From: Ascoidea asiatica JCM 7603
Taxonomy: Eukaryota; Fungi; Ascomycota
Direction of reading: 5' to 3'
Assembly: GCA_001600695.1 (NCBI GenBank)
Contig: BCKQ01000001.1
Location: 1,957,628 to 1,966,461 of the forward strand
Length of the DNA: 8,834 nt
Shown one piece after another: positions 1 through 8,834 of the stretch. A model generated the notes under the pieces. It was not told where the DNA came from. It searched no databases and worked only from the letters and a program-made list of their open reading frames with translations. How positions within the stretch are numbered: position 1 is the stretch's first letter; every line of letters starts with the position of its first letter. The position numbers were made by a program, and so were the translations under genes.

Positions 1-1110
1 GCTACCAAATTACCAACTATTGTTTTGAAACTATTTGGATTTTATGCAAGTAAACAAAAACCAAGTGCTCCAACCGTTTTCATATTAAGTATGAAACACC
101 TTTTAATTCACTGTGAAGATAACTATGAAATACCTGGTCCCAAAATTGTAACATATTTAGAAACAGTAATTGCTACCAACCCTGTAATCGAATATGATGA
201 GAAAACCCTGCCAATACGACATGGACTACTAAAAAATACCGCTATTTCTCTTTTCGAATTTTACCCAACTGAAAACCAAATTGCCCTTCCACCGGAAGAA
301 AACCAAAAAACTTTTTCATTTCTAGAACTAAAAAGAATAAATCAAGAATCAGAGTATTATTGAAACAATAAACACTGTGGGTTAGATGAAGAAACTGAGA
401 CATATGGTTTTAGTAAATTTACTAAAATCTTCGAATGTGTTTTGGTGCCATAAATGAAAACAATATTTTGGTAAATTTGCGCTCAATTAATTCTTTTCAA
501 TTAGGAGAGTTCTCCTTGATCAGGGGGGATGAGAAGGGATTGTTAAACATTTTTTACTTAGAGAACAATAAAGTCTCTGATCTAGACAGATTCGAAAGAT
601 CCGACGAGATTCATATATTGTTATTCAGTTTCCGAAAATGAAAACCAACAATCCAGTCAAGAAAGACTGCTGTTGTAAAAAATAAAAACGTTATACATGG
701 TTTATTGTTGGCATACCTATGGACTTATATTTCAGATGCTTTCAAAATCCAATCCTGAACTGATTTCATGTTTAATCGATAAAGAGCAGTTCTGTAAAAC
801 AAAATTGATAAGTGGTGCTTTGAGAGATAAATCAATATCCTACAATAGGCAGTTTATTGTTGTATTATCCGGGGGGGGGGGGTCAATATACCAATATTGA
901 ATTTATATGAAAGACTCATGCTGGCCGGAAAAATGGTGCTCAACAAGCTAAATTTATTGGGGCTCTCAAAGGAAGAAGTCCATAAGCAGGGTGGTTGGAA
1001 TCCCGAGGCGCTGGAAAAAAATTATTTGCAGCAATACAATTGGTCATTTGCATATGCCATCAATGCGTTGCTTCAGATGAATCTTTATTCCTACCTAGGC
1101 CAAAAGCATC
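1..1110 (+). pseudogene. 5' part of Crypton-type tyrosine recombinase pseudogene (N-terminal region + catalytic YR/Ndc10-II-like domain)
   Basis: Frame 1 is open from base 1 to TGA 361-363. Catalytic-position codons: R 522-524 (LIRGD), K 641-643 (KTN), H 917-919 and R 926-928 (THAGR, frame 2), W 996-998 (GGW) and Y 1023-1025 (frame 3). LFLPR lies at ~1086-1100. Several frameshifts and stops; explains ORFs 25..363, 435..641, 697..900, 897..1127 and part of 995..1189. Confidence 0.85.
871..882. repeat. G12 homopolymer
   Basis: Twelve consecutive G read directly; lies inside the YR pseudogene, between segments in different frames. Confidence 0.95.
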
Positions 1111-2153
1111 TGTTATGGGCGTTGTGAATTTTCATTCATTTTACAAAATCGAATATATAAATTTTACGTATTTAGTAACTATGTATTAGTCAATTAACTC
1201 CTGCTAATCGATGAGCTAAAAATAAAACTAAATAAATTATATAAAAAAATAAGAGGAAATCGATTCCTTTTATATTGGTACTGGATTCCTACGGGGTCCC
1301 GCAGAACTATCGAGAATTCTCGGGAATGCCCTAAACTCCCAGGATCCCTGTGTAGAATCAGGCCGGGAATCACGTTTACTATGTATAAAGGGTTGAAAAA
1401 CTGATTAGAAATCAATTGAAATGCACATTTCAATTTTACCATAGTAAAACCAATCATCCCACTTTCCTGTGGGGTAGACAACCAAACTAATTGCCCGGAA
1501 TAATCTTTAATCCTGAAGCCGTACTCGGAATAGATTCTTAGGGGAGTAGCTCGACTAGTCTCCCGTTTACACCGAGACAATTCGGTATACGTAGTTGAGA
1601 ATTATACCTTATCTCGCATGAAACTAGGCTTAGTCAATCTAACCATCCAGAAGGCGTCCCTGCCTGGATCCGCTTGGCCTTGCTGATTTAATTTCTATCC
1701 GGATAGAGGCTAAATCCCAACTCCTCTTTAATTCTCCGCGTACCGAGTGGCTTAGCTTCAATATGCTTTTAAAGGTTGGACCACTATGGCTGGTACCAAT
1801 CTCAAGGTTTTTTCTACTTTGTACGCTATACCTGACGTAAGCAAAGATGACCTATTCCATGTGACTAGAATATTACATGATATCCTAGTATCTGAGAACC
1901 TGTACAGAGACTCCGCAACGTCATGTGAATTGATGTATTCCCCACCCAACTTATTGCCACTTTAGGCAACAATATGTATATTAGTGCCTAATTATGCATC
2001 TCTATGCATAATTATGCATAGTGTACACGCATTATTGTATAATACATAACTCTGTTACGTCTACTATAGATACGTGTCTTTTAGACCTTCAGAACCTATG
2101 GTGTGACTCCCAATATACGGACTAGCATATACGTATGTCTGTTATTTCCAACA
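1111..2153 (-). mobile_element. ~1043 bp non-coding insertion, probable solo LTR (minus orientation)
   Basis: Crypton homology stops near 1110 and resumes near 2154. The minus strand begins TGTTGGAAATAAC (resembles the Ty1 LTR start TGTTGGAATA) and ends GCCCATAACA, giving TGTT...AACA termini. Minus-strand TATAAAA at 1268-1274. GC content is visibly higher than the flanks. No clean 5-bp TSD (GCATC vs ATCGG; only ATC shared). Confidence 0.65.
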
Positions 2154-3250
2154 ATCGGTTCATACCCCTTCAAATTTATCGAAGAAGAAAAAGGAAAATT
2201 AATAAATTGTGAAAAGGAAAAGTTAAAAAGTTTGTCTAAGAAATAAAATTTTGAAATTAGTAGTGGTGATCGTGAATTTATTAAAACACTAGAATAATTT
2301 CATAAACCATTTCCACCTGATATAGTAGGATTCCCAATATTATTCCCAAATAGCTATATAATCCATGATGAAAAATTCATAAGCAGTACGGTTCTAAAAA
2401 AAAACACTCCGGAACAACAATTGGTGGAAAGTGAAATTCAAAAATCTTGTAAGAAGCTTTATATACATTTTACCAAAACTTTTTTATCAGTAAATGAAGA
2501 GGTGGCTAGCTTGGCTGGAGAAGTGGTGATAGTAACTGGAAATTTTTCCTAAGAATTAAGAACAAGCTACGTGGAGGGAAGGACAAAATGTGTGGACATG
2601 GTTAGAACTTAAACCAAAATCAACAGAGAGGAACAAAAGTCGCTGACTTTTCTAAACTTTTTAAGCTGAACGCTACCTTTTCATTAGCTGCGTAAACAAC
2701 TGTGGCTCCTCCCTGAAATTTAGACCTCGATAATCCAACTATTGCTCAGGAGTCCTACTTGTGAAACATATAAACACAAGTAGATCTGAACCTTTCTATA
2801 ATGAACCTGCTGAGTATATTTATACTACTGTAAAACCAAATTCTATTGAATTCAAAAAAACCAAGAACCGTTTCAAAACTTTGATTTCCAGAGACGGAAC
2901 AAAAAATGATTACTATAAAGGAGCATGTAATAAAATGTCAAGAAATGTGAAAACGGGTTCTGAGGTTTAAAAACAATGGTTTAAAGTGATCAACGATAGA
3001 CCTTTAATTTTGTTAATAATTATCTAATACTGTTCTAGTGGGAGTCCAATAAAAACTTTATCGTCAATTCTATTCAAAAAGGTTTCCAATTGCTCTTTGT
3101 TAGGATAAAAAAAAAATGAGAAGAGCTTTCACAAAGAGAGAAGTATAAAAATTGGTTCCAATGGATTACAAAAAATATTTAGAAAAATTCCCACTTTTCA
3201 AACACGATCGGATTATATTAAAAATAATTTACCAAATCAAGGGGATATAG
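2154..3250 (+). pseudogene. 3' part of Crypton-type gene: post-YR helical region, linker and GCR1_C-like DNA-binding domain
   Basis: From 2154: IGSYPFKFIEEEKGKLINCEKEKLKSLSKK*NFEISSGDREFIKTLE*FHKPFPPDIVGFPILFPNSYIIHDEKF. From 2932: KMSRNVKTGSEV*KQWFKVINDRP...YCSSGS, then RQFYSKR at 3062-3082. These match the remembered GCR1_C pattern MSRxxxTVxDLWxEW...YGxxWR...FYSRR. The end coordinate is approximate. Confidence 0.75.
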
Positions 3251-3340
3251 ATACATATTTCCAATGTGTTTTGTAGTAGCTGTCTAATCAGATTGGCAAT
3301 CGTAGACAGTAGTAAAATATTGCTATCTTAAATTTCTTTG

Positions 3341-3399
3341 AAATCAAATTTAAATTCAAATTCAAATTCAAATTTGAATTCAAACTTAAATTCTAAATT
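3341..3399. repeat. Degenerate (TTCAAA)n hexamer microsatellite with an internal inversion
   Basis: AAATCAAATTTAAATTCAAATTCAAATTCAAATTTGAATTCAAACTTAAATTCTAAATT; contains the perfect 16-bp palindrome AATTCAAATTTGAATT at 3365-3380. Confidence 0.8.
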
Positions 3400-3795
3400 G
3401 TGGGGAAAGGTCAATTATTATTGCAAAATAATAGAAATAATGAAGCTTTTAATAATTACATGCAGAATTTAATATATACACCAACTGTTAAATCACTAGC
3501 AGCTGTTCTTAAAATTGTGTATTATTTTACTAATTTCAGATGAACTATAGAATTCTTTTTTTAATTTATTCTTCTTATTGAATCTTATTAATCCTCAACA
3601 CTTTCTCGAAATAATTAAAATAATAATAATATCTTCGAAAGCCGAACCTGTATTCTCCGTATTCTTCGATATTAACAACAAATAATGGAACTATTTGATG
3701 TTTGATAGTATATTTTTTTTATTGATTGTTTTTGTCTAATTACATCTATTGAGATGCCTTGATTTATGCTATTAAATGATCGATTTCTGGTGACG

Positions 3796-4004
3796 TGTTG
3801 GATTTACTATCGTAATATTGTTTCCGCTAGAAACTCATTTAAAAAAAATAAAAAGGAATATTATTTGTTATATCTAATTATATATATAGATATATGTATG
3901 CACTTCCACAGTTTTATACATGTAAAAAAGAGAATAAAAGATTACTATTCTATTTAATATTATTATTATTTTAAGATAATAATCAAATAATAATTTTCGT
4001 AACA
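3796..4004 (+). repeat. Candidate 5' LTR of the copia element (alternative start TGTTA at 3486)
   Basis: Starts TGTTGG at 3796 and ends TAACA at 4000-4004, 18 bp before the gag ATG at 4023. Contains a TATATATA run (~3879-3888) and AATAAA (~3933). No second copy in the window to confirm it. Confidence 0.4.
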
Positions 4005-4022
4005 AGTTAGGTTTAAGACAAT

Positions 4023-5240
4023 ATGGATTCCGAAGAGGGTACCGTGGCTGAAGGCTTAGAAGCCCATTATGTTAACGATTCAACACCAGGAAATAATTAT
4101 ATGTTTGAAACCACGACAAATATTGCTATTGGAAGTTCGTCAGTAAACAGTGGTGAAAACAATTTAACTATGGATTTGATTATGCCAAAGTAGTTTGGAA
4201 GTCAAATGATAAAGCAAGATTTAATTTGTGGTATGCAAATTTGGTACGAGTATTACCTATGCGTAAAATCAAAAATGCTATAAAGAAATATTTAGATTAT
4301 ACAGATCAATTATAAAACTAGTGATATAGTAAAGCATATTTTAACATTAAGTATTGGAGACAATTTTGCTGGCTTTCTAGATCCTACTGCTCATGGAGTA
4401 TTAGGTTCATCGAATTTAAGTTCTATAGCAGGAAAGCCTAGACAAGCATTTAAAATTTTTAATGATTTAAATGACTTCAAATTCAATGGAAAAGATGTCA
4501 ATAAACATATCATGCCAATAAATGGAATAAAGATGGAATTGGTAAAAGCTAAAAATCCCCTATCAAATTCAATTATTGTTAATTATATCTTAAAAGGATT
4601 AACAGGAAATTACGCAGTTTTGAAATTAATCATCAGAGCACAGAAAGCTAAACCCTCATTAGCTAAATTATTTACAACATTAATCAATTTGGCTAATCAT
4701 GATCAAGAAAAAGATGAAACAACAGTTATTAAAGAGGTTAAAAATGTTGAAAAGTATAACAAATCCCGAAATAAATTTGGAATTGAGTTTGAAGGAAGTT
4801 ACTTTGATTGTGGTAAGAGAGGACATAAAAAGTGTCAATGTCGAAAGCCGCTACAGGAAAATAAAAACAAATTTGGTTTGAACAATAATAAAATATCATT
4901 TGAATCAAAATTTACTTGTTTATTTAGTATTGAAAGAAACGAAAGAGCTACAGGATATGTTAATAGTATTGTCATAGATTCTGGTGCTGCGGCTACTATT
5001 ACAGGGAATATATCATTATTGCATAATACTAAAGATTATAATTATAGAAAATTAAAATTTAAGCAAGCAACTGGTGAAGAATTTGTTCCAGAATCAGTTG
5101 GAGAATTAATTATTAATGTAGGAAATAATAAAGTTAATTTATTGCGATATTATTTTGCTGATATTAGACATACTTAAGTTGCTCCTTATCACTTAAAAGA
5201 AAAGGGATGTTCAATTAATGATGGAATTCTAAAGAAAAAA
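4023..5240 (+). pseudogene. copia gag + aspartic protease remnant
   Basis: ATG at 4023. Zinc knuckle YFDCGKRGHKKCQC at 4800-4841 (CX2CX4HX4C with first C->Y). Protease IVIDSGA with DSG at 4977-4985, in the same frame as the knuckle (ORF 4512..5177). Confidence 0.88.
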
Positions 5241-5329
5241 ATTCGAACTTGAAAGAAAATACTATACCTATTAAATATGATAATAGAATATGGATGATGA
5301 TCAAAAATATATTGATAAGGAAAGTTTTA

Positions 5330-6210
5330 ATGAATGAAATTAATCTTCATTCAAAGTTAGTTCATATAAATAAAAATACAATTATTAAAAGTGTTAACCA
5401 TGGACTATTTTCAGGTGTAAAAGAGAAAGCTACAGAAGATATTAAAAACTTCGAATGTAAAACTTGTGGTATTTGAAAAGCTCCAAGATCTCCAAATTAT
5501 AAAAGTTCGATGATAGAACCATCTTCGATGATTCATTGGAAAGCTGTTCATAGTGATATACCTGCACCATTTAAAACTTCAATTAATATTTAGTTTGATA
5601 CATTCACTTATGAGTTTACTAGTTACTCATATGTTGTTCCAATGAAACAGAAATCTCATATTTATTATAACTTTGTTAATTATTAAAATTAATTAGAAAT
5701 CAATATGAAAGAAGTATTAAAAGCTTACATTCCGATAATGGATCCGAATATATTTCGAAAACTTTTGTAGTAGTATCTGAAAAAAATGGTATTATTCAAA
5801 GCTTCACTACTGCTTACACTCCTTCATCAAATCGTATTGCTGAGAAAAGGAATCATATTATTGTAAGAGATGCTAAACTATGATTGGATGGAAGTGATAT
5901 ATTTAGGAATAACGTTAAAAGTTTGTGTTTTGAAGCAATAATGTATGGTAAATTATTGCGAAATTCAACTTATAATGATTCTCTAAACGATAAACCTTAT
6001 CACCGTCTTTCTAAAAAAACGATTAATATTAAAAAACTTCATACTTTTGGTGCCAAAGTAACTATTACAGATTTGGGTATAAAGAATAAAAATTTGTCAA
6101 AGGTGTGAGAGGATATTTTATTTGACCATCTAGTAAATGTTTTGCTTGGAAAATATTCAATCCGGATATTAAAGGTCTTGTAGAAACAAAACATGTGAGA
6201 TTTTTTATTG
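5330..6210 (+). pseudogene. copia integrase remnant (HHCC + DDE core)
   Basis: LHSKLVHIN...CKTC (HHCC); VHSDI at ~5546-5560. LHSDNGSEY has D at 5734 and TAYTPSSNRIAEKRN has E at 5842, giving exact D-x35-E spacing. LHTFGAKV follows downstream. Confidence 0.92.
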
Positions 6211-6949
6211 AAGATGGATTTCTGAATGATGATGGATTGCTCACCGATGATTATATTGGTAATGATTTATAACAAAATTAAATATCTTGATATTGATATT
6301 AATGAAGAAGAATCTACAAACTCTAATAATAATCATAATAGTAGCAGTGAAAGTGAAAAATTATTTTCAGATAATAGTATTGGTGAAATATATCATGAAA
6401 AACAAAATAAAACTTTGAAAGAAGGGAAAGCAATGATACATTGGAAGATTATTATAAACAGTCTGAAGTTGAGAATAATTATACAAATGATATTACGGAT
6501 ATATACGACAGTTCTGAAATTGACAAAAAACTTGGTGGTCATAACTCAGATATTGAAGATATTATTAAAAATATTCAATCTGCTTTAGTGGGTGCAGATA
6601 ATACAATTAGCGATATTGATGAATCAATTGCACCGAAAAAAATAGGTGCTATAGATAAACCTTATAAAGTAACTAAGCTTATATTGAAATTTGGTTCTAA
6701 AAGTTCTACTCCTGCAAATAGAAAAAAAATTTTAATAAACGATATAAATATAGAATTAGTATTGCAGAATTAGGTAACAATTTATTGGAAATGAATAATT
6801 TAAATAAAGTTATAAATCTTCGAAGTGTTATGCAGGCAAAAGAAAGGCCTGATTCGTCTGAGAGAAAATCTTCTATTGATCTGGAATTAGCAAGTATCCA
6901 GGAATATGCAGGAAACAAAACTTGGTCGAAACTTATTGATGAATATGCA

Positions 6950-7900
6950 TGCCCAAAATATCCTATTGAAACTAAGTAGGTATTTTATATTAAACCTAAT
7001 GGTAAATATAAAACTTGATTGGTTGCGTTGGGAAACTTAAGGGATGATAGTTCTTTTCAAGATACTTAAGCTCCTACAATGGATATGTCAATGCTAAAGC
7101 TAGGTTTAGCCTGGTGTATTAAAAAGGAATATAAATAAAAAGTTATTGATATTTCCACATGATTTTTAAATGCTAATTTAGATGGGCCTATCTTCATATA
7201 TATTCCTGATACTGTTGATGGTTCAGACGGTAAGTATAAGATAGCAAAGCTAAATAAAGCATTATTTTCGATTCAAACAGAGTGGACGATTATGGCATAA
7301 AGCAAATACAGAATATTTCATAAGTCTCAATTTTGAGACTAATCCTGCTCCATCTGTTTAATTTCATAAGGAAGGGAAAATAAATGATGCTATGGTTCTA
7401 GTATTAGTTGATGATATAATGTTTATCACTAAGACAGGTGGCCGGTTCAAGTAAGTAAAAAAGTTTTTGAGAAACGCTTAGTTCTAAATTAACTTTAGGT
7501 CATGCAGAAAGAGACGGATACTTACTTGCATTTATTTTTGTCGAAGAATTAAGTAAAGAAAAAGAATCATTATGTAATAAGTTATCTTTGTAAACTAATA
7601 TAGAACAGTTTTTTAAGATATGTAATATTGAAGCTTTCACAAATAGAATACATTTAAGCCCAGAATTCAATTTAGTCTGTCTAGAGAAAATTTAGATTAT
7701 AATGAGGAAGATTTCAAAAACAGAGAAAAAAAGATATAAAAGTATGGTTGGTTCCCTTCCTTATGTAGATACGAGACGCAGACCTCATGTAGGTTATGCT
7801 TGTAAAAATTTGGCGAGCTTTGCTATCCTTGTTCGTAAGAAATTGTTTAAAGAATGGGAAAATGTTGTGCAATATCTATACTTTACTAGAGCTTAAGGGG
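6950..7900 (+). pseudogene. copia reverse transcriptase (RVT_2-type) remnant and connection region
   Basis: TK*VFYIKPNGKYKT*LVALG, DT*APT, IDIST*FLNANLD, KLNKAL...KQSGRLWH, VLVLVDDIMF (LVDD at 7404-7415), YKSMVGSLPY...RPHVGYA. Confidence 0.92.
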
Positions 7901-7929
7901 GACTAGTGTTTAATGATAAAAGTGTTGGT

Positions 7930-8325
7930 GATAATATTGCGATATCTGACGGTGCTGACTATTCTTCAGATCATGTTACAAAATCATCTATTTTAATAGT
8001 TACTTAATTTGGTAATTATGGGAATATTTCATAGACATATAACTTAACTCTTTTGGTATGTACTTCATCAAGCGAAGCTGATATACTAATGGAATGTTAG
8101 CTATCAAAGGAACTGTTCGGTTATATCAACTGAAAGACTTTCTGGATTTTCACTTGAATTTCCGTATTATAATTAATTGGGATCATTTGGCTGTTGTAAT
8201 GGTTATTGAACAAGAGAATTTTAATTCAACGAATAAACATTATGACGGTAAGTATCGGGCAAATCGTGAGGACATTAACCGTGGAATTATTACTGTGAAA
8301 TATATCGGTACTGTTGACAGAAATG
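7930..8325 (+). pseudogene. copia RNase H remnant, C-terminally truncated
   Basis: ISDGAD, CTSSSEADI (cf. STAEAEY), WDHLAV (cf. DNQAAI), NKHYDGKY (cf. TKHIDIRY), VKYIGTVDRNA. The expected terminal AD(I/L)xTK is absent. Confidence 0.85.
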
Positions 8326-8389
8326 CTTCAACAATCATTTCTGACCTCAGTTCTTATAATACTAAGTTATGATCCCTTGATTATTTTTT

Positions 8390-8472
8390 TGTTTCAATTT
8401 TTTGTTTCAATTTTTATTATGTGTTTCAATTTTTATCATGTGTTTCAATTTTTTGTTTCACATTTTATTACG
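8390..8472. repeat. Tandem array of 5 x TGTTTCA(ATTTTT) units
   Basis: TGTTTCA starts at 8390, 8403, 8422, 8441 and 8454 (spacing 13,19,19,13). The longer units carry ATTATG/ATCATG, and ATTACG follows the last unit. Confidence 0.95.
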
Positions 8473-8590
8473 TCATTAATTTGTTTATCTATTGTTTTAT
8501 ATTTTCGTGTTTGTTTATTTATTTCTCCATTAGGTAAACCTTTGCTTACATTTCGGAGAGCAGCATGATATATAAAGAGATATTGAAACA
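8390..8590 (+). promoter_or_regulatory. Putative pheromone-responsive promoter: Ste12 PRE cluster, Mcm1-like half site, TATA box
   Basis: Five TGTTTCA (reverse complement of the PRE TGAAACA) plus TGAAACA at 8584-8590. TTTCTCCATTAGGTAAA at 8522-8538 has a good right Mcm1 half site. TATATAAA at 8569-8576; ATG at 8660. Function is inferred, not shown. Confidence 0.5.
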
Positions 8591-8659
8591 CTTATAATTA
8601 TTTTAATTTAATTTTAATTTATTTTTTAAATTATTATTATTCTTTATTATTTATATCAC

Positions 8660-8834
8660 ATGTCAACTAACTTAATAATTTTACCTTCCCCCTCCTTAAT
8701 TGAAACAATTAAACAATTTGAAAATAATTTAGGACTTTATCTCCCTCTTATTTTGGAATTTTATGTTCAACATAAGGACACAACTTTTTTTATTGATGAT
8801 TCAAGTGATATTTCTATTAATAATAAAACTAAAA
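8660..8834 (+). CDS. 5' end of an unidentified ORF running off the window (hypothetical protein, partial)
   Basis: ATG at 8660 opens 58 stop-free codons to the window end (MSTNLIILPSPSLIETIKQFENNLGLYLPLILEFYVQHKDTTFFIDDSSDISINNKTK) in very AT-rich DNA, ~85 bp after a TATA box. Not in the supplied ORF track; no homology recognised. Confidence 0.5.
   Translation, partial: MSTNLIILPSPSLIETIKQFENNLGLYLPLILEFYVQHKDTTFFIDDSSDISINNKTK

What the first reader, a model, noticed from the sequence alone, without database searches (positions are those of the whole stretch)
1..3250. Hidden CryptonF-type tyrosine-recombinase transposon with a complete catalytic set plus GCR1_C domain
Seen: six short ORFs plus unlisted frames join into one gene carrying R(522)-K(641)-HxxR(917/926)-W(996)-Y(1023), followed by a GCR1_C-like domain (2932-~3250). 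Established: YR + GCR1_C is the CryptonF architecture, and the yeast genes NDC10/CBF2, GCR1, MSN1 and HOT1 are considered Crypton-derived; Ndc10 is not an active recombinase. Inference: retention of every catalytic residue in a decayed copy argues for a formerly mobile, catalytically competent Crypton rather than a dead domesticated gene. If the host is a budding yeast, it could be a relative of the element family behind the kinetochore protein Ndc10. ORF-based annotation would miss it.
Basis: partly seen in the sequence, partly recalled or inferred. Interest (0 to 1): 0.8.

Follow-up and report, generated by a model that had tools for sequence, protein, structure and literature searches.

The report
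Dead Crypton transposon in budding yeast
This is the broken fossil of a known type of fungal jumping gene (a Crypton) in a budding yeast, notable mainly because such elements gave rise to the yeast kinetochore protein Ndc10 and I found no report of them as transposons in budding yeasts.

Summary
Window ~109-3094 is one collinear, heavily broken CryptonF gene: tyrosine-recombinase (NDC10_II-type) domain with R522, K641 (or K663), H917-x-x-R926, W996, Y1023, then a decayed GCR1_C (2932-3094, weak). Pfam misses the pieces. Frameshift-aware alignment scores 150-163 against Pfam-positive sister relics in the same genome and 63-69 against an intact outside Crypton (null about 40, maximum 56-69). It has about 10 stops, at least 8 frameshifts and a solo LTR at 1120-2153 (not 1111; target duplication ATGGG/ATCGG). 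Keeping all six residues is unremarkable under neutral decay (simulated P about 0.2) but shows that the ancestor was catalytically complete. Dispersed dead paralogs (C3 64%; C7/C11 75% nt; C15) and a ~60-kb gene-free transposon nest favour a once-mobile element; no intact copy was found and termini cannot be defined. A special link to Ndc10 is untested. The scan noted Crypton relics elsewhere in this genome before. Side result: the 5' half sits in a real, recent inverted duplication with a 139-nt spacer. New member of a known kind; modest interest.

The parts
1..450 (+). 5' part of the Crypton gene: N-terminal (core-binding-like) region, frame 1, stop at 361; start codon and 5' terminus not identifiable (window begins at the 139-nt spacer)
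   Evidence: aligns to C11/C7 relics from 109-142 onward; window:1-360 finds C7/C47 at E 0.035; profile p about 0.01
456..1119 (+). catalytic tyrosine-recombinase core, broken by frameshifts near 605-650, 713, 742, 842-884, 960-969, 1076 and stops at 639 and 908 in the aligned path; no intron signals
522..524 (+). catalytic Arg (first R), motif LIRGD
641..643 (+). catalytic Lys candidate (MKTNN); alternative Lys at 663-665 (SRKT)
   Evidence: spacing compared with L024
917..928 (+). H-x-x-R motif (THAGR)
996..998 (+). Trp of the His/Trp position (GGW)
1023..1025 (+). nucleophile Tyr position (KNYL; KTYL in P0004)
1115..1119 (+). left target-site duplication ATGGG
1120..2153 (+). solo LTR (1034 nt, TGTTG...CAACA ends, first base mutated), at least 40 copies in the genome at 81-89% identity
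2154..2158 (+). right target-site duplication ATCGG (4 of 5 match)
2159..2460 (+). helical C-terminal part of the NDC10_II-type domain; stops at 2244 and 2295
2460..2931 (+). poorly conserved linker with several stops and frameshifts
   Evidence: DNA homology to the C3 relic from about 2600
2932..3094 (+). decayed GCR1_C DNA-binding domain; stops at 2968 and 3025, frameshifts near 3039 and 3059
3095..3340 (+). end of the gene (stop at 3274) and 3' region still shared with the C3 paralog; probable 3' end of the element near 3340
1..2153 (.). right arm of a recent inverted duplication; the left arm lies just outside the window (G000:C1:1955337-1957488, minus strand) beyond a 139-nt spacer

Best explanation
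A fossil CryptonF DNA transposon. The ancestor encoded one protein of about 650-700 residues: an N-terminal DNA-binding bundle, a tyrosine-recombinase domain with the full R-K-HxxR-W-Y set, a linker and a GCR1_C DNA-binding domain (architecture shown; catalysis inferred from the family). By the accepted model it excised as a circle and integrated by recombination at short direct repeats (established model, not testable here). This copy landed in a gene-free transposon nest, died, gathered about 10 stops and 8 or more frameshifts at roughly 10% neutral divergence, and was hit by an LTR retrotransposon that was reduced to a solo LTR (shown). Much later its 5' half was copied as an inverted duplication ending in another LTR copy, which removed or hid the 5' terminus (duplication shown; fold-back mechanism inferred). 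It has no function today. It belongs to a lineage-specific group with the C3, C7/C47, C11 and probably C15 relics, all dead.
For: Collinear significant alignment 109-3079 (score 206 vs 46+-5; YR 150-163 vs real-DNA max 56); sister relic C7/C47 is over the Pfam NDC10_II cut-off (E 1e-17) and carries GCR1_C downstream; intact P0004 has the same layout and aligns at 63-69; LTR ends, 5-bp duplications and frame continuity; paralog on C3, 64% nt over about 740 nt, shared past the stop codon; C7 vs C11 75% nt over a bounded 2.25 kb; no intact host gene from about -24 kb to +37 kb; decay simulation; tree groups window with C7/C11, 99/98.
Against: No intact copy, no termini or 4-6-bp direct repeats; only one same-subfamily paralog and it is 5'-truncated; C7/C47 is a segmental duplicate, not a transposition; Pfam misses the window; the outside-only profile is not significant; tree has 8 rows, long branches and uneven composition.
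Confidence: 0.85

Rival explanations
1. Pseudogene of a domesticated host gene (NDC10/Cdg1-like) that kept its catalytic residues and was duplicated and lost in this lineage.
For: Ndc10 is reported as deeply conserved across Pichiomycetes and Saccharomycetes (PMC13017519), yet no intact NDC10_II gene was found in this genome; copy number is low.
Against: Ndc10 and Gcr1 lack the catalytic site (PMC3212892) whereas the window and C15 keep it; at least four mutually distant copies (20-53% aa) lie in different repeat-rich places; the locus is in a ~60-kb gene-free nest; the intact host GCR1_C genes have no YR region; window pieces show no match to solved Ndc10 (low power).
Confidence: 0.08
2. Relic of another eukaryotic YR element (Starship captain DUF3435, DIRS/Ngaro retrotransposon) with a chance GCR1_C-like stretch.
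For: GCR1_C support from outside sequences alone is weak (p about 0.02).
Against: Sister relics hit NDC10_II, not DUF3435, and have clear GCR1_C (score 118); the C3 paralog scores GCR1_C above all 500 shuffles; no linked RT/RNaseH; the neighbouring copia-type relic is a separate element.
Confidence: 0.03
3. Motifs picked by eye from AT-rich junk; the stitched gene is a chance construction.
For: No Pfam, PDB or Atlas hit for any single window piece; many frameshifts give the aligner freedom.
Against: The same freedom was given to shuffles, reverse complement and 64 real genomic chunks, none above 69 against 150-206.
Confidence: 0.02

Closest known systems
CryptonF DNA transposons (Crypton-Cn1 of Cryptococcus and relatives; Kojima and Jurka 2011, PMC3212892)
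   Same: YR domain with R-H-R-Y (plus K and W) followed by GCR1_C; no LTR or TIR of its own; gene length about 2.1-2.2 kb without the insert
   Different: dead; only about 22% identical to the nearest intact protein found (P0004); no introns evident; termini unknown; host is a Saccharomycotina yeast, a group absent from Table 1 of that paper
Ndc10/Cbf2, Cdg1, Gcr1, Hot1, Msn1 (domesticated CryptonF genes of budding yeasts)
   Same: NDC10_II-type domain and/or GCR1_C; P0004 hits solved Ndc10 at E 3e-5
   Different: Ndc10 and Gcr1 have lost the catalytic site and are intact conserved genes; the window keeps the catalytic codons but is a multi-copy pseudogene; no evidence of special kinship
Other Crypton relics in the same genome (C3; C7/C47; C11; C15)
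   Same: same layout, all broken; C3 64% nt, C11/C7 27-28% aa to the window
   Different: C7 and C11 have lost the first Arg (C7 also the Trp); C15 is a distant family; only the window copy has the LTR and the inverted duplication
Fold-back inverted duplications resolved at LTRs in S. cerevisiae (PMC10622511)
   Same: identical arms around a short spacer, duplication end point inside an LTR, chimaeric LTR without matching target duplication
   Different: natural and kept in runs from two samples; spacer 139 nt; mechanism only inferred

Membership tests
CryptonF | tyrosine recombinase domain with R-H-R-Y tetrad | tested here: met
CryptonF | C-terminal GCR1_C domain | tested here: met
   2932-3094, p 0.002-0.02 depending on profile, at the expected position; below Pfam detection
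CryptonF | 4-6-bp direct repeats at both termini, no TIR or LTR | not testable with these tools
   5' end lost in or beyond the 139-nt unresolved spacer; 3' end only roughly placed near 3340; no long terminal repeat seen
CryptonF | dispersed copies in unrelated flanks (mobility) | tested here: met
   C3 paralog; C7 vs C11 bounded homology; low copy number, all old
CryptonF | nests with CryptonF rather than with domesticated genes in a YR tree | tested here: inconclusive
   8-row tree without Ndc10, Cdg1, Gcr1 or Repbase elements
CryptonF | no reverse transcriptase in the element | tested here: met
   no RT between 1 and 3340; the copia-type relic at 4020-8310 is separate
NDC10/CBF2 (domesticated) | catalytic site not preserved | tested here: not met
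   all catalytic codons present; PMC3212892
NDC10/CBF2 (domesticated) | single-copy, intact, syntenic gene | tested here: not met
   broken, several paralogs, gene-free nest; synteny with other species not testable
Starship captain (DUF3435) | DUF3435 hit, no GCR1_C, large cargo element | tested here: not met
   no DUF3435 hit for window pieces or P0004; GCR1_C present
solo LTR (insert) | TG...CA ends, 5-bp target duplication, many copies | tested here: met
   perfect 5-bp duplications at 6 of 11 other copies inspected

The most novel reading that the evidence does not exclude
These relics are the surviving fossil of the Saccharomycotina-resident CryptonF lineage from which NDC10/Cdg1 (and perhaps GCR1, HOT1/MSN1) were domesticated, that is, the transposon sister group of the kinetochore protein Ndc10, with intact relatives still to be found in other Ascoideales genomes.
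Probability: 0.12. Interest if true: 0.7.

Novelty: new member of a known kind. Interest (0 to 1): 0.33.

Why it matters
The Crypton origin of Ndc10, Gcr1, Hot1 and Msn1 was proposed in 2003-2011 from elements of filamentous fungi and basidiomycetes; the papers I could search list no Crypton transposon from a budding yeast, and a 2026 paper on CBF3 origins does not mention Cryptons. Relics with a full catalytic set show that such elements did live inside Saccharomycotina, which makes the source of those domestications testable by a tree across the ~1,100 yeast genomes. This copy itself is dead, cannot be assayed, and adds nothing mechanistically new.

Tried and rejected
Pfam on window pieces: nothing relevant. 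tblastx/blastn of the window against the other relics: nothing; frameshift-aware alignment was needed. Three word searches were blank, so the large protein search was used once (4 hits, one full Crypton). Atlas on a window piece was uninformative. PDB searches with window pieces and host GCR1_C genes gave nothing. A single-sequence fold of P0004 was useless (pLDDT 34); no fold search was run. An outside-only profile was not significant. The MAFFT alignment of pieces is out of register and was not used. Cep3 search was blank but its control did not ring. Rejected: the 1111-2153 and 8-bp-repeat boundary models (other copies begin at the base matching 1120 and lack the variant that makes the 8-bp repeat); introns as the cause of the breaks (no splice or branch signals, no spare length); the inverted copy as a pure assembly error; the 3344-3400 palindrome as a recombination site (very common simple repeat, absent from the C3 copy). 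A scan note of a GCR1_C relic near C1:23-25 kb was not confirmed.

Full report
Setting. The window is G000:C1:1957628-1966461 of a 20,313,720-base assembly in 71 contigs. A published table gives 20.3 Mb and 71 scaffolds for Ascoidea asiatica JCM7603 (PMC5499181); I take that as the probable host, by size match only. No intact host gene lies between about -24 kb and +37 kb of the window start; the long ORFs there are retrotransposon pieces. No RNA run holds the sequence, which says nothing about expression.

Observation. Pfam does not see any single piece, and the genome-wide NDC10_II and GCR1_C searches miss the window but find other broken copies on C7, C47, C15 and C11, two of them far over the NDC10_II cut-off (E 1e-17 and 1e-15). 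The large protein search with a C15 piece returned one intact protein with NDC10_II (E 2e-42) and GCR1_C (E 8e-20), P0004, whose nearest Atlas clusters are fungal and oomycete NDC10_II/GCR1_C proteins and which hits solved Ndc10 at E 3e-5. I wrote a local frameshift-aware aligner and scored the LTR-free window DNA. P0004 alone gives 63 against shuffles of 37+-4, max 54. A profile built without the window aligns collinearly over 456-2456 at 86 against 38+-4, and with C11 added over 109-3079 at 206 against 46+-5. Against 64 real AT-rich chunks of this genome the YR part scores 163 (C11), 150 (C7) and 69 (P0004), null maximum 52-56. A four-sequence outside-only profile gave just 45, so the strongest support is transitive, through the Pfam-positive sister relics. 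The GCR1_C stretch at 2932-3094 is weak but in the right place: 0-1 of 500 shuffles reach it with the mixed profile, 23 of 1000 with outside sequences only. The Lys is ambiguous: 641 fits the canonical spacing of L024, 663 fits the aligner and the C11 motif.

The insert. It is a solo LTR with at least 40 copies. This settles the two boundary models of scan note s1-632984.

State of decay. The aligned path has about 10 stops and at least 8 frameshifts. There are no splice or branch signals and no spare length for introns. In a simulation of AT-biased neutral decay, 9 stops per 640 codons correspond to about 0.1 changes per site, at which all six catalytic codons survive 22% of the time and five or more 58%. 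C15 also appears to keep all six (by eye), while C7 and C11 have lost one or two.

Mobility. A paralog on C3 is 64% identical in DNA over window ~2600-3340, past the stop codon at 3274, in different flanks. C7 and C11 share a bounded 2.25 kb at 75%; C47 is a segmental duplicate of C7; C15 is single. In an 8-row tree the window groups with C7 and C11 (99/98) and then C15, apart from outside Cryptons; long branches and composition make the deeper grouping unsure. No intact copy was found. Termini and 4-6-bp repeats, the family's hallmark (PMC3212892), cannot be tested.

Inverted duplication. Window 1-2153 is mirrored upstream across a 139-nt mostly-N spacer. The arms are identical over 1-1691 apart from one base in a G run and differ only in the distal LTR; that LTR has mismatched flanks. 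In three runs (two samples) the contigs over 1-1150 have depth 65-97 against 39-59 for 2102-4000, all end exactly at base 1, one further record runs over that end, and a left-arm variant (2008 A>T) is present (contig depth is only a rough guide, and two runs may be the source of the assembly). The few called letters of the spacer are self-complementary, as expected if both orientations were merged. The duplication therefore looks real, carries all the inactivating changes, and so post-dates the death of the gene; the recombinase of this copy cannot have made it. It resembles fold-back duplications that end at LTRs in S. cerevisiae (PMC10622511); that mechanism is inferred. It also explains the one Crypton-like stretch seen upstream by s1-637250.

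Comparison and novelty. YR plus GCR1_C is CryptonF; Ndc10, Gcr1, Hot1/Msn1 and Cdg1 are four domestications, and Ndc10 and Gcr1 lack the catalytic site (PMC3212892). That paper's host table has no Saccharomycotina, a review gives 0% for S. cerevisiae and C. albicans, and my searches found no report; Repbase and most subscription papers were not searched, so 'unreported' is provisional. The intact host GCR1_C genes have no YR region, and no intact NDC10_II gene was detected, although Ndc10 is reported to be deeply conserved. I could not obtain Ndc10-family sequences as usable ids, so special kinship to Ndc10 is untested; window pieces show no PDB match.

Verdict. A real, dead CryptonF copy: new member of a known kind, confidence 0.85, interest 0.33. 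The novel case (transposon sister group of NDC10) has probability about 0.12. The joined protein was used only in local scripts, with X at breaks; remote tools saw pieces by reference only.

Noticed in passing
window 1-2153 and G000:C1:1955337-1957488: Recent inverted duplication with 1.7-kb identical arms, a 139-nt spacer merged to N by the assembler, and a chimaeric LTR at the outer end; read contigs support it as real.
   Followed up: yes
window about 4020-8310, + strand: Heavily broken copia-type retrotransposon interior (gag, protease, integrase, RT, RNaseH order by eye; weak TYA/gag Pfam hits); 3400-4030 was not repeated in the loci held, so no 5' LTR was identified.
   Followed up: partly
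window 8312-8834 (continues to about 8885): A second dispersed repeat (91% to C3, 79% to a copy 7.7 kb upstream) that begins with a small TGTTGA...TCAACA inverted repeat; the TGAAACA/TGTTTCA 'pheromone element' array noted by the scan lies inside it and is part of the repeat (5 sites in the C3 copy).
   Followed up: partly
G000:C1 about 1933000-1994000: About 60 kb without intact host genes, filled with LTRs and retrotransposon debris; could be a centromeric element cluster (Ty5-type clusters are reported for Ascoideales, PMC13017519), but I found no clean Ty5-type primer site.
   Followed up: partly
window 3344-3400: (TCAAAT)n simple repeat forming an imperfect palindrome right at the 3' end of the element; very common in the genome and absent from the C3 paralog.
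   Followed up: yes
G000:C2:2280888-2285307 and C1:740495-742837: Three intact host GCR1_C genes (two in tandem on C2), low-complexity, without a recombinase region; probably Hot1/Msn1-like. No intact NDC10_II gene was detected in this genome.
   Followed up: partly
G000:C7:848193-856980 and C47:12929-21499: Segmental duplicate of at least 8.5 kb at 97.8% near a scaffold end, carrying a Crypton relic.
   Followed up: partly
P0001-P0003 (ENA metagenomes): Proteins made of three or four tandem GCR1_C domains with no recombinase domain.
   Followed up: no
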